Assembly (NCBI RefSeq): GCF_001194135.2
Contig: NC_068997.1
Location: 14,239,234-14,303,233, forward strand
Reading direction: 5' to 3'
DNA: 64,000 bases
Source of the DNA: Octopus bimaculoides
Taxonomy: Eukaryota
A program made the position numbers and the translations under genes. This document shows, piece by piece, positions 1 to 1,347 of the stretch. The notes under the pieces were generated by a model. It made no database searches. It was not told the origin of the DNA and worked only from the letters and a program-made list of their open reading frames with translations. The stretch's first letter is position 1. The number at the start of each line of letters is the position of its first letter.

Positions 1-948
1 CTTGGATTCAATCGATGTATCTATAGCACCTGGTTGTCTTGGATCAACTCCAACGCCAACAGTTTTCTCAGATTTAAGATTCTTAATTTCTAATTCTGCT
101 TCAGTTCCGAATCTCGGAGTGTAGCTTAAATTCTTGGATTCAATCGATGTATCTATAGCACCTGGTTGTCTTGGATCAACTCCAACGCCAACAGTTTTCT
201 CAGATTTGAGATTTTTAATTCCAAATTCTGCTGCAGTTCCAAATTTCGGAAGAGCGTAACTTAAATTTTTCAACTCAGTCGAAGTATCTATACCACCTGC
301 TTGTCTTGGATCAGCTCCAACGCCAAACGTTTTCTCAGATATGAGTTTTTGAACTTCTAATTCTGCTTCAGTTCCAAATTTCGGAGGGTATGTTAAATTC
401 TTCGATTCAATCGATGTATCTATACCACCTGCTTGTCTTCGATCAATTCCAACGCCAACTGTTTTCTCAGATTTGAGATTTTTAATTCCTAATTCTGTTT
501 CAGTTCCTAACTTTGGATTGTAGGCTAAATTCTTCGATTCAATCGATGTATCCATACCACCAACTTGTTTTGGATCAACACCACTTTCAGTATTCTTTTC
601 AGATCTGAGAGTGTTAACACTTAATTCAGCTTCTGTTCTAAGTTTAGGTGTAAAGGTTAAACTTTTGCTCTTATTTGGTGTATCACTACTACCAGCTTGT
701 CTCGGATGAATTCCGACTTCAATAGTCTTTGCAGATTTGTTATCTTTCATCCTTAAATCGGATTCTGTTCCAAATTTATGACTGAGGGCTAAATTTCTTA
801 CGGCAGCCGATGTATCTCTGCCACCTGCTTGAATTTCCTGAAGACCAATTTCAATATTCTTTTCTGGGTTGATGTATAAACTTGCTGTAGTTGTTTCCTT
901 AACTTTATTATCAGCTTGCATTTCATCAATATCGACTTCAATATTCTT
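1..948 (-). repeat. Coding minisatellite: 132-nt (44-aa) tandem array
   Basis: Anchor motif K-[TN]-x-x-x-G-x-x-x-x-Q starts at 861, 729, 597, 465, 333, 198, 66 (spacings 132,132,132,132,135,132), plus a more diverged unit at 948 (87 nt upstream). Bases 1-75 are identical to 133-207. Confidence 0.95.
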
Positions 949-1347
949 TTGAGTTTTGAGCAATATTTCAATTGTTTCCTGATGCACAACTTCTCCCTCA
1001 ACGAAATTTCTAGTTTTTACAATCACCTTATCTTTGTGGATATCTGAGTCAAGTAAGAAATTTTCAACCCTATCAACACCTGGAAAGGTTTCGTTTGTAT
1101 AGAAAGTTTGATCTTTGAATGCATCATTTCCATCAGCATGACTTGCTTTCATTGCGGCAACTGGAGAACTCTCCACAGAATGAGAAACTTGTTCTTTGAT
1201 GGAAACATCTTCAGCAAAGTTACACGAGCGGTCCACTCTTTCCCAATCTACATTTGCAATCAGATCTGAACGAGAGTATCTTGGTCTACTAATTGTGAAT
1301 CTATCTTCAAAATGGTCAATGTAACAGTTAAGGGACTGATCCTCCAT
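1..1347 (-). CDS. Large coding exon (3'-incomplete, continues beyond window start) of an uncharacterised protein with 44-aa tandem repeats
   Basis: Manual translation (codons start at positions divisible by 3) is stop-free from 1395 to 1; first ATG at 1347 in context ATA-ATG-G. Begins MEDQSLNCYIDHFEDRFTISRPRYSRSDLIANVDWERVDRSCNFAEDVSIKEQ... and ends ...NLSYTPRFGTEAELEIKNLKSEKTVGVGVDPRQPGAIDTSIESK at base 1 (449 codons). Strong upstream acceptor (TTTTCTTTTCTTTATTTGTAG, exon start 1413) followed by an in-frame TAA at 1398-1396, so 1413-1348 reads as 5' UTR. The one repeat-length change is +3 nt. Not in the ORF track, presumably because there is no stop in the window. Confidence 0.8.
   Translation of the reverse strand, partial: MEDQSLNCYIDHFEDRFTISRPRYSRSDLIANVDWERVDRSCNFAEDVSIKEQVSHSVESSPVAAMKASHADGNDAFKDQTFYTNETFPGVDRVENFLLDSDIHKDKVIVKTRNFVEGEVVHQETIEILLKTQKNIEVDIDEMQADNKVKETTTASLYINPEKNIEIGLQEIQAGGRDTSAAVRNLALSHKFGTESDLRMKDNKSAKTIEVGIHPRQAGSSDTPNKSKSLTFTPKLRTEAELSVNTLRSEKNTESGVDPKQVGGMDTSIESKNLAYNPKLGTETELGIKNLKSEKTVGVGIDRRQAGGIDTSIESKNLTYPPKFGTEAELEVQKLISEKTFGVGADPRQAGGIDTSTELKNLSYALPKFGTAAEFGIKNLKSEKTVGVGVDPRQPGAIDTSIESKNLSYTPRFGTEAELEIKNLKSEKTVGVGVDPRQPGAIDTSIESK

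What the first reader, a model, noticed from the sequence alone, without database searches (positions are those of the whole stretch)
1..1347. Hidden >=449-aa ORF encoding an unrecognised 44-aa tandem-repeat protein
Seen: a stop-free minus frame absent from the ORF track, with about 130 aa of unique acidic N-terminus, one 29-aa proto-repeat, and then seven 44/45-aa units such as NLSYTPRFGTEAELEIKNLKSEKTVGVGVDPRQPGAIDTSIESK. The units are rich in K/E/T/S/G/I, contain no Cys or Trp, and have alternating V-G-V-G-V and E-L-E-I-K segments. I do not recognise this repeat as any known family. Inference: a lineage-specific repetitive structural or disordered protein in one giant exon.
Basis: partly seen in the sequence, partly recalled or inferred. 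Interest (0 to 1): 0.7.

Follow-up and report, generated by a model that had tools for sequence, protein, structure and literature searches.

The report
Octopus ThTPase-like gene's repeat-rich first exon
The open frame is real, but it is the first coding exon of an already annotated octopus "thiamine-triphosphatase-like" gene, and its 44-residue tandem repeat matches no known family or described function.

Summary
Window 1347..1 (minus strand) is a stop-free frame of 449 codons that runs off the left edge. It has an acidic unique N-terminus, two degenerate half-units and six full 44/45-aa units, not seven. It looked "hidden" only because the ORF lister omits ORFs that run off the window.

It is not unannotated. 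The 449 residues are 100% identical to residues 1-449 of an 809-aa NCBI protein from assembly GCA_001194135.2, which I recall to be Octopus bimaculoides. That protein has 8 full units and a partial ninth. It ends in a CYTH domain homologous to mammalian thiamine triphosphatase. The gene spans 311 kb, so it is not a single-exon gene.

The repeat itself is an orphan:
- No Pfam, NCBIfam or PDB match.
- In 1.84 billion representative proteins, the only hits were its own cluster and one bacterial repeat protein, which I reject (hhalign probability 15%).
- Sequence periodicity and two low-confidence AlphaFold models both suggest beta structure.
- There is no signal peptide.

The CYTH domain has lost both glutamates of the EXEXK metal site (LLRRK) in two Octopus species.

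Best reading: an intracellular, lineage-restricted beta-repeat extension on a probably catalytically impaired ThTPase homologue. Its function is inferred, not shown.

The parts
1414..1456 (-). Putative 3' splice site: polypyrimidine tract (1456-1421) ending in tttgtAG (AG at 1415-1414). An alternative cAG lies at 1403-1401.
   Evidence: Read directly from the sequence. Inferred; no transcript data are available here.
1348..1413 (-). 5' untranslated part of the exon. It holds an in-frame TAA at 1398-1396 and no upstream ATG.
   Evidence: The in-frame stop means that translation cannot enter this frame from an upstream exon.
1345..1347 (-). Start codon ATG, with A at -3 and G at +4.
   Evidence: It coincides with Met1 of the public models P0001 and P0004.
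952..1347 (-). Unique acidic N-terminal region, aa 1-132 (pI 4.76), with no signal peptide or hydrophobic segment.
   Evidence: No homologue was found.
796..951 (-). Degenerate proto-repeats, aa 133-184: two half-units (133-155 and 162-184) resembling KTVGVGVDPRQAGGIDTSIESK, joined by SLYINP.
664..795 (-). Repeat unit 1 (aa 185-228, 44 aa), the most diverged.
532..663 (-). Repeat unit 2 (aa 229-272, 44 aa).
400..531 (-). Repeat unit 3 (aa 273-316, 44 aa).
268..399 (-). Repeat unit 4 (aa 317-360, 44 aa).
133..267 (-). Repeat unit 5 (aa 361-405, 45 aa, with a one-codon insertion).
1..132 (-). Repeat unit 6 (aa 406-449, 44 aa). The frame continues beyond the left edge of the window. In the full protein, units 7 and 8, a partial unit 9, a linker and the CYTH domain follow.

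Best explanation
Window 1413..1 (minus strand) is the first coding exon of the annotated thiamine-triphosphatase-like gene. I attribute it to Octopus bimaculoides because I recall that GCA_001194135 is that species' assembly.

Shown:
- The exon carries a short 5' UTR, the start codon and a 132-aa acidic leader.
- Two degenerate half-units follow, then the first six of 8 full 44-aa tandem units; a partial ninth unit follows the eighth.
- In the full 809-aa product the repeat array is followed by a ~70-aa linker and a C-terminal CYTH domain homologous to mammalian 25-kDa thiamine triphosphatase.

Inferred:
- The protein is intracellular, since it has no signal peptide or membrane segment.
- Each unit forms two amphipathic beta-strands, ELEIKNLKSEKTVGVGVD and IDTSIESKNLSYT, separated by the turns DPRQAGG and TPKFG. 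The array would then build an elongated beta-meander or solenoid-like rod.
- The array grew by unit duplication under moderate purifying selection (omega about 0.5). The youngest, most similar units lie next to the CYTH end.

More speculative: the rod acts as a scaffold, spacer or self-association module that positions the CYTH domain. That domain keeps the triphosphate- and thiamine-contacting residues (K11, Y39, W53, R55, R57 and K65 equivalents). It has replaced both glutamates of the EXEXK Mg2+ site (LLRRK) and two further acidic-patch residues. It is therefore probably a ligand-binding but catalytically impaired enzyme, in the manner of a pseudoenzyme.
For: Identity:
- The window ORF matches P0004 aa 1-449 with 0 mismatches.
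- P0004 comes from NCBI assembly GCA_001194135.2, on a 57.4-Mb contig, with a gene range of 311 kb and a Pfam CYTH hit.
- Its cluster-mate XP_036366379.1 is named 'thiamine-triphosphatase-like [Octopus sinensis]'.

CYTH domain:
- Pfam PF01928, E = 4.4e-8, 33.6 bits against a cut-off of 23.2.
- phmmer to mouse and human ThTPase structures 5a65, 2jmu, 5a64, 3bhd and 3tvl gives E = 2e-8 to 3e-6. The alignment shows VERKF->LRRKF, with an ungapped extension giving E7->L, and conserved VYYDT and SWLRMRNGKWELK.
- The same LLRRKF is present in O. sinensis, which is 94% identical over 257 aa.
- Roles of these residues are taken from PMC8615392, PMC4641920 and bioRxiv 10.64898/2026.02.04.703868.

Coding status: (open frame, in-frame indel, excess of synonymous changes).

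Exon anatomy.

Beta structure:
- The hydrophobic moment peaks at 170-180 degrees. The ratio mu170/mu100 is 1.68, against 0.97 +/- 0.11 for shuffles.
- AlphaFold2 gives all-beta repeats in both runs, with pLDDT 50-75 in the single-sequence run and a mean of 52.6 with the unit pseudo-alignment.
- The Foldseek neighbours are all beta-solenoid or beta-helix proteins, none significant.

Intracellular location: the highest 19-residue Kyte-Doolittle mean is 1.37, and the N-terminus is hydrophilic.
Against: - No transcript, peptide or localisation data could be consulted, so the junction between the repeat exon and the CYTH exons rests on two automated gene models.
- In O. sinensis the CYTH gene is annotated as only 257 aa. 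A separate single-exon 837-aa gene lies 1.2 kb upstream on the same strand. The fusion could therefore be a modelling choice.
- AlphaFold confidence is low: the five models range from pLDDT 26 to 53, and no PDB fold matches (best E = 0.09, TM <= 0.22).
- AlphaFold is known to draw beta-solenoids for many repetitive sequences.
- On the charge-hydropathy plot the repeat sits on the border between order and disorder (H = 0.424 against a boundary of 0.415).
- Selection on the units is only moderate. Some pairs have dN/dS near 1.
- Loss of EXEXK argues for, but does not prove, loss of activity.
- I could not check whether octopus has a second, canonical ThTPase gene.
Confidence: 0.6

Rival explanations
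1. The repeat region is intrinsically disordered. It would be an array of short linear motifs (KFGTEAELE, KTVGVGVD, GGIDTSIESK) that bind a periodic partner such as a cytoskeletal filament, one unit per subunit, as nebulin or tau repeats do. Alternatively it is simply a flexible spacer in front of the CYTH domain.
For: - The composition is hydrophilic and rich in K, E, S, T and G (GRAVY -0.68), with no Cys or Trp.
- The charge-hydropathy position is borderline.
- AlphaFold pLDDT is mostly below 70, and no fold match was found.
- There is a precedent for a ThTPase-derived protein recruited to a microtubule structure: Jhc1 at cilia tips (bioRxiv 10.64898/2026.02.04.703868).
Against: - The hydrophobic alternation with period 2 is strong and regular, far beyond shuffled sequences.
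- Both AlphaFold runs give the same strand boundaries.
- Jhc1 has lost the basic triphosphate-binding residues that the octopus protein keeps, so the precedent is loose.
Confidence: 0.25
2. The repeat ORF and the CYTH domain belong to two separate adjacent genes, and the 809-aa and 792-aa O. bimaculoides models are chimeric. The repeat ORF would then be a stand-alone, single-exon orphan protein.
For: The O. sinensis annotation has a 257-aa CYTH gene. On the same strand, a single-exon 837-aa gene without any Pfam hit ends 1245 bp upstream of it. The size fits a 184-aa leader plus about 15 units.
Against: - P0004 reads without interruption from unit 8 through a partial unit 9 (NLSYTPRFGTEAELEMKTKGFGTD) into the linker and CYTH domain.
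- The O. sinensis 257-aa model starts at the Met inside that partial unit (MKARGFGAD aligned to MKTKGFGTD). Repeat-derived sequence is therefore in frame with CYTH in both species.
- Two independent annotations of O. bimaculoides give the fused model.
- A frameshift error in the long-read O. sinensis assembly would produce exactly such a split.
Confidence: 0.12
3. The region is a non-coding 132-bp minisatellite whose open frame is fortuitous, and the gene models are over-predictions.
For: The surrounding window is full of simple repeats that create spurious long ORFs in several frames.
Against: - The 184 unique codons upstream of the array are also open (P = 5e-7).
- Only one of the six frames is open.
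- The start context and the upstream acceptor fit an exon.
- There is an excess of synonymous changes (p = 0.001). The frame survives at 8-38 differences per unit (P = 0.0025). The only indel is a whole codon.
- The frame continues into a bona fide CYTH domain.
Confidence: 0.02
4. The units are alpha-helical TPR/HEAT-like repeats related to the 43-aa repeats of a bacterial STAND NTPase (P0002).
For: - phmmer against the 1.84-billion library gives E = 2.4e-13, 66.6 bits.
- BLASTP gives repeated 21-28% identity alignments sharing FG, QAG and ID positions.
- A column-permutation null never reached the real score (82 bits against a maximum of 27 in 300 permutations).
Against: - The score is one weak unit-to-unit match of about 10 bits, multiplied by 8-11 near-identical units.
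- Extrapolating the permutation tail gives about 4e-7 per repeat protein. That is within reach of chance in a library of this size.
- hhalign of the two unit profiles gives a probability of only 15%.
- No TPR or HEAT Pfam model hits the octopus protein even at E <= 10, whereas many hit P0002.
- The hydrophobic periodicity is minimal at 90-100 degrees (helix) and maximal at 170-180 degrees (strand).
- AlphaFold predicts no helix in the repeats.
Confidence: 0.01

Closest known systems
Mammalian 25-kDa thiamine triphosphatase (THTPA; CYTH / triphosphate tunnel metalloenzyme superfamily; PDB 3BHD, 3TVL, 2JMU, 5A64, 5A65)
   Same: The C-terminal ~185 residues of the full protein align with ThTPase over almost its whole length (E about 2e-8) and pass the Pfam CYTH cut-off. 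The K11, Y39, W53, R55, R57, K65 and E159 equivalents are conserved.
   Different: - ThTPase is a stand-alone ~220-230-aa enzyme. The octopus protein carries a ~620-aa N-terminal extension made of leader, repeat array and linker.
- The signature EXEXK is LLRRK (E7->L, E9->R).
- D145->V and E157->V by the alignment.
- The part inside the window has no counterpart in ThTPase at all.
[quoted passage not shown]
   Same: It is a CYTH/ThTPase homologue that has lost the EXEXK metal-binding motif and acquired non-enzymatic regions. This is a precedent for ThTPase being recruited to a structural role.
   Different: - Jhc1 is reported only in vertebrates.
- Jhc1 has also lost the basic triphosphate-binding residues that the octopus protein keeps.
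- Its added regions are two internal disordered segments, not an N-terminal tandem array.
Beta-solenoid repeat proteins and functional amyloids (curli CsgA 8C50, FapC 9U4U, autotransporter passengers such as Ag43)
   Same: They have tandem strand-turn-strand units, and they are the nearest Foldseek neighbours of both AlphaFold models.
   Different: - No match is significant (E >= 0.09, TM <= 0.22).
- Those proteins are secreted bacterial proteins with ~19-23-aa rungs.
- Here the unit is 44 aa, highly charged, and in a protein without a signal peptide.
- The resemblance is of predicted fold class only.
Bacterial STAND NTPase with 43-aa TPR/HEAT-like repeats (P0002)
   Same: The period is similar (43 against 44 aa), and a few positions are shared (FG, QAG, ID).
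   Different: Its repeats are helical with clear TPR/HEAT Pfam hits. The octopus unit has beta periodicity and no such hits, and hhalign probability is 15%. I judge the match to be repeat-amplified chance.

Membership tests
CYTH / thiamine triphosphatase (whole protein; the domain lies outside the window) | Sequence match to the CYTH domain model above the curated threshold | tested here: met
   PF01928 scores 33.6 bits against a cut-off of 23.2, E = 4.4e-8, at aa 635-750 of P0001. phmmer to five ThTPase PDB sequences gives E = 2e-8 to 3e-6.
CYTH / thiamine triphosphatase (whole protein; the domain lies outside the window) | EXEXK signature motif in the first strand (the two Glu bind Mg2+) | tested here: not met
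   The octopus sequence is V-V-L-L-R-R-K-F where mouse has L-I-E-V-E-R-K-F. E7->L and E9->R, while K11 is kept (alignment with ungapped extension). O. sinensis has the same LLRRKF. The role of the motif is taken from PMC8615392 and bioRxiv 10.64898/2026.02.04.703868.
CYTH / thiamine triphosphatase (whole protein; the domain lies outside the window) | Basic tunnel residues and catalytic dyad (R55, R57, K65, Y39) and the thiamine-stacking W53 | tested here: met
   VYYDT and SWLRMRNGKWELK align to TYYDT and HWLRQREGSGWELK. Residue roles are taken from PMC4641920 and PMC8615392.
CYTH / thiamine triphosphatase (whole protein; the domain lies outside the window) | ThTP or triphosphate hydrolase activity | not testable with these tools
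   This needs a recombinant enzyme assay.
Any Pfam, NCBIfam or PDB-represented repeat family (for the 44-aa unit itself) | Detectable profile or sequence similarity | tested here: not met
   Pfam gives 0 families at E <= 10, and NCBIfam gives 0. PDB phmmer gives 0. A PDB profile search finds only noise; the best hit, E = 0.016, is an antibody light chain. In the full protein, CYTH is the only Pfam hit.
TPR/HEAT-like helical repeats (via P0002) | Profile-level homology and helical periodicity | tested here: not met
   hhalign probability is 15%. The hydrophobic moment is minimal at 90-100 degrees. AlphaFold predicts no helix in the repeats.
Beta-solenoid / functional-amyloid repeats (CsgA, FapC type) | Significant structural superposition on a solved solenoid | tested here: inconclusive
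   The best Foldseek hits are E = 0.09 (8c50 CsgA) and E = 0.14 (5awf SufB), with TM <= 0.22, on models of mean pLDDT 40-53. The models are too weak to decide.
Jhc1-type ThTPase-derived pseudoenzyme | Loss of EXEXK together with loss of the basic triphosphate-binding residues; restricted to vertebrates | tested here: not met
   EXEXK is lost, but R55, R57 and K65 are kept. The paper reports that Jhc1 is absent from non-vertebrates. No Jhc1 sequence was available for direct comparison.

The most novel reading that the evidence does not exclude
In the octopus lineage the ancestral metazoan thiamine triphosphatase has been converted into a non-catalytic triphosphate-binding module. It is mounted on a newly evolved, fold-level-novel beta-repeat rod that self-assembles or decorates a cytoskeletal structure. 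This would be an independent, invertebrate parallel to the vertebrate Jhc1 pseudoenzyme, and the 44-aa unit would define a new repeat family.
Probability: 0.15. Interest if true: 0.6.

Novelty: new variant of a known kind. Interest (0 to 1): 0.35.

Why it matters
As a gene, it is already in the public annotation, so nothing hidden has been uncovered.

What is undescribed, as far as my searches reach, is the architecture. An orphan 44-residue tandem array accounts for about 45% of the protein (units 1-8 and the partial ninth). With the leader and linker, it forms an N-terminal extension of about three quarters of the protein. That extension is fused to a ThTPase homologue that has lost its EXEXK metal site in two Octopus species.

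If confirmed, it would be:
- a second, independent example of thiamine triphosphatase being re-used as a probable pseudoenzyme;
- a small case study of how lineage-specific repeat domains arise in cephalopods.

It does not open a long-standing question, and the functional reading is inference.

Tried and rejected
1. Word-indexed homologue searches gave nothing. I ran three: the whole ORF, the unique N-terminus, and the linker plus CYTH region. They did not return even the identical public protein, so that index evidently lacks this cluster. The null results say nothing about distribution.

2. I tried to obtain DNA to the left of the window and the O. sinensis locus through the look-up of encoding contigs. 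The genes were found, but no DNA was served because the gene ranges (311 kb and 396 kb) exceed the limit. I could not retrieve the O. sinensis 837-aa upstream neighbour by any route, so the orthologue test (open frame, dN/dS) could not be run.

3. The bacterial hit P0002 was examined with Pfam, BLASTP, a column-permutation null and hhalign. I rejected it as a repeat-amplified chance match.

4. Fold searches of both AlphaFold models against the PDB gave no significant hit.

5. A shifted-window pseudo-alignment failed, because MAFFT simply re-aligned identical segments. I used homogeneous unit concatenations instead.

6. No other copy of the repeat exists in the remaining 62 kb of the window (tblastn). 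Rfam finds nothing in the window.

7. Literature searches for this gene in cephalopods found nothing.
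Full report
**1. What is in the sequence**

Translating window 1347..1 on the minus strand gives 449 codons without a stop. The frame opens at 1395, after a TAA at 1398-1396, and runs off the left edge of the window. In the same 1404 bases the other five frames carry 16 to 62 stops.

Tandem Repeats Finder reports a 132-nt period over 1..583 with 85% matches. The repeat finder shows the same array in register, with identity falling from 88% to 70% away from the window edge (family D10).

Parsing the protein gives four parts:
- A unique acidic leader, aa 1-132, pI 4.76.
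- Two degenerate half-units, aa 133-155 and 162-184. Both resemble the second half of the unit and are joined by SLYINP.
- Six full units at aa 185-228, 229-272, 273-316, 317-360, 361-405 (45 aa) and 406-449.

The 29-aa 'proto-repeat' is one of two half-units. The units contain no Cys or Trp and are rich in K, G, S, T, E and L.

The ORF was missing from the 'ORF track' for a mechanical reason. The ORF lister does not report ORFs that run off an end of the source, and one search lists nothing in 1-1404.

**2. Is it coding?**

Several independent lines say yes.
- From local base composition, the 184 non-repetitive codons stay open with probability 5e-7.
- If six copies of the consensus unit are mutated at random to the observed divergence (8 to 38 differences per 132 nt), all six stay stop-free in only 0.25% of trials.
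- Differences from the consensus are 36% synonymous against 23% expected (binomial p = 0.001, equivalent to omega of about 0.5). Third positions change most: 47 differences against 29 and 34.
- Pairwise Nei-Gojobori dN/dS among units is 0.34-1.0, mostly near 0.5. Constraint is therefore moderate, not strong.
- The only length difference among units is one whole codon.

The ATG at 1347-1345 has A at -3 and G at +4. No ATG lies between it and the upstream in-frame TAA. A 36-nt polypyrimidine tract ending in tttgtAG (AG at 1415-1414) lies just upstream. This is the anatomy of an internal exon that carries the end of the 5' UTR and the start codon. The splice site is inferred from sequence only.

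**3. What it belongs to**

An exhaustive HMMER scan of 1.84 billion representative proteins found two hits.

The first, P0001 (792 aa, UniParc UPI00071DCD51), starts with the same sequence. Its 90% cluster holds two further proteins:
- P0004, 809 aa, from NCBI.
- P0003, which is XP_036366379.1, 'thiamine-triphosphatase-like [Octopus sinensis]', 257 aa.

The window ORF is identical to P0004 residues 1-449 with no mismatch. P0004 is encoded on a 57.4-Mb contig of GCA_001194135.2, with a gene range of 311 kb and a Pfam CYTH hit. I recall that accession as the Octopus bimaculoides assembly; I could not verify this in the papers I read. The many N gaps flanked by (TA)n fit a Hi-C-scaffolded shotgun assembly, as described in PMC9068888.

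The 'hidden' ORF is thus the 5' coding exon of an annotated gene.

The full protein has this layout:
- Eight full units, aa 185-537.
- A partial ninth unit, NLSYTPRFGTEAELEMKTKGFGTD.
- A ~70-aa linker.
- A CYTH domain (PF01928, 33.6 bits against a cut-off of 23.2).

The C-terminal part aligns with mouse and human thiamine triphosphatase structures at E = 2e-8 to 3e-6 over nearly the whole enzyme.

**4. The CYTH domain is atypical (outside the window, but relevant)**

In the alignment the signature EXEXK (mouse E7-V-E9-R-K11) reads L-L-R-R-K in octopus. Both metal-binding glutamates are replaced. D145 and E157 equivalents are Val, D147 is Glu and E159 is kept.

The following are conserved:
- The tunnel residues R55, R57 and K11.
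- The Y39/K65 catalytic dyad.
- The thiamine-stacking W53.

The roles of these residues come from PMC8615392, PMC4641920 and bioRxiv 10.64898/2026.02.04.703868.

O. sinensis has the same LLRRKF and is 94% identical over all 257 residues, so the change is not a sequencing error. I infer a ligand-binding but catalytically impaired domain. This is not shown.

The bioRxiv paper describes Jhc1, a vertebrate ThTPase paralogue that lost EXEXK and became a structural protein of the cilia tip. It is a precedent, not a relative. Jhc1 has also lost the basic residues that the octopus protein keeps.

**5. The repeat itself**

The unit matches no described family.
- Pfam gives no hit at E <= 10, and NCBIfam gives none.
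- PDB sequences give none, and a profile of the units against the PDB finds only noise.

The second library hit, P0002, is a bacterial STAND NTPase with 43-aa repeats that hit TPR and HEAT models. BLASTP shows 21-28% identity, unit against unit. A column-permutation null never reached the real score (82 bits against a maximum of 27 in 300).

I still reject this hit, for these reasons:
- The score is one ~10-bit unit match multiplied by many near-identical units.
- The extrapolated tail, about 4e-7 per repeat protein, is within reach of chance in a library of this size.
- hhalign between the two unit profiles gives 15% probability.
- The octopus unit has beta periodicity, not helical periodicity.

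**6. Predicted structure**

The hydrophobic moment of the array is lowest at 90-100 degrees and highest at 170-180 degrees. The ratio is 1.68, against 0.97 +/- 0.11 for shuffles.

AlphaFold2 was run twice:
- On the full protein without an alignment, it gives pLDDT 50-75 in the array and below 35 elsewhere.
- On units 3-8, with a pseudo-alignment built from the window's own units, it gives mean pLDDT 52.6 and pTM 0.50.

Both runs give an all-beta array with two long strands per unit, broken at DPRQAGG and TPKFG.

Foldseek against the PDB finds nothing significant (best E = 0.09 and 0.14, TM <= 0.22). The neighbours are uniformly beta-solenoid or beta-helix proteins such as CsgA, Ag43, SufB/D, pectate-lyase-like folds and FapC.

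Confidence is low, and AlphaFold tends to draw solenoids for repeats. 'Beta-rich rod' is therefore the favoured reading, not an established one. The charge-hydropathy position is borderline between order and disorder. The protein has no signal peptide or membrane segment, which argues against a secreted structural material.

**7. One gene or two?**

In O. sinensis the CYTH gene model has 257 aa and a range of 396 kb. A single-exon 837-aa gene with no Pfam hit ends 1245 bp upstream on the same strand. Its size fits a leader plus about 15 units. I could not obtain its sequence.

The 257-aa model starts at the Met inside the partial ninth unit (MKARGFGAD aligned to MKTKGFGTD). Repeat-derived sequence is therefore in frame with CYTH in both species. 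Two separate O. bimaculoides annotations also give the fused protein.

I favour one gene, split in O. sinensis by a frameshift or by the annotation. Only cDNA can settle this.

**8. Verdict**

The best explanation is an intracellular N-terminal beta-repeat extension of a ThTPase-like, probably catalytically impaired, CYTH protein. Identity is near certain. The structural class is plausible. The function is inferred.

Novelty: a new variant of a known kind. Interest is modest.

Noticed in passing
window 9550-9942 (-): A 131-codon open stretch matches the HTH domain of Mos1/mariner transposase (PF17906, E = 7.9e-8; PF01710, E = 7.6e-5). This is a mariner-type transposon remnant in the region upstream of the gene's start codon.
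   Followed up: partly
window ~19845-20120, 20858-21135, 47414-47628, 55783-56075, 59292-59718, 60058-60180: A dispersed SINE-like element of a few hundred bases occurs in at least five copies at 70-88% identity, often next to (CA)n/(TA)n runs (repeat finder families D12-D16 and D20). A second family is at 15937-16126, 26987-27076, 47722-47911, 57100-57189 and 59858-59947 (D18, I9). It produces the recurring pseudo-peptide 'TRLQSDLA.FLQLDALPNANH'.
   Followed up: no
window 2192-2700, 4027-4575, 8634-8790, 16136-17034, 17903-18150, 45448-45705, 49265-49597 and ten smaller gaps: The window has 17 runs of N, most flanked by (TA)n/(CA)n microsatellites. These create artefactual ORFs of 250-410 'X' codons in several frames. 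This is a scaffolded draft assembly whose gaps sit in simple repeats.
   Followed up: yes
window 10180-10700, 11596-11960, 13352-13800, 42221-42950, 46360-46914, 50557-50800: Imperfect trinucleotide arrays (GGT/GAT/GTT-type, periods of 9-15) give long low-complexity ORFs (poly-S, poly-T, poly-L, poly-P) on both strands. None looks coding.
   Followed up: no
O. sinensis GCA_006345805.1, locus of XP_036366379.1 (no DNA served): A single-exon 837-aa gene with no Pfam hit lies 1.2 kb upstream of, and on the same strand as, the 257-aa ThTPase-like gene. It is probably the repeat array annotated as a separate gene, with more units than in O. bimaculoides.
   Followed up: partly
P0001 against P0004, residues 432 and 434 (window about 46-54): The two public models of the same protein differ only at I/V432 and A/V434, inside unit 6. 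At these positions unit 6 of the older model looks like unit 7. This suggests either allelic variation or repeat mis-assembly between assembly versions. The true unit number may therefore be uncertain.
   Followed up: no
tool behaviour: The word-indexed homologue search did not return the identical public protein for any of three queries, whereas the exhaustive HMMER search did. Null results from that index say nothing about this eukaryotic gene.
   Followed up: yes
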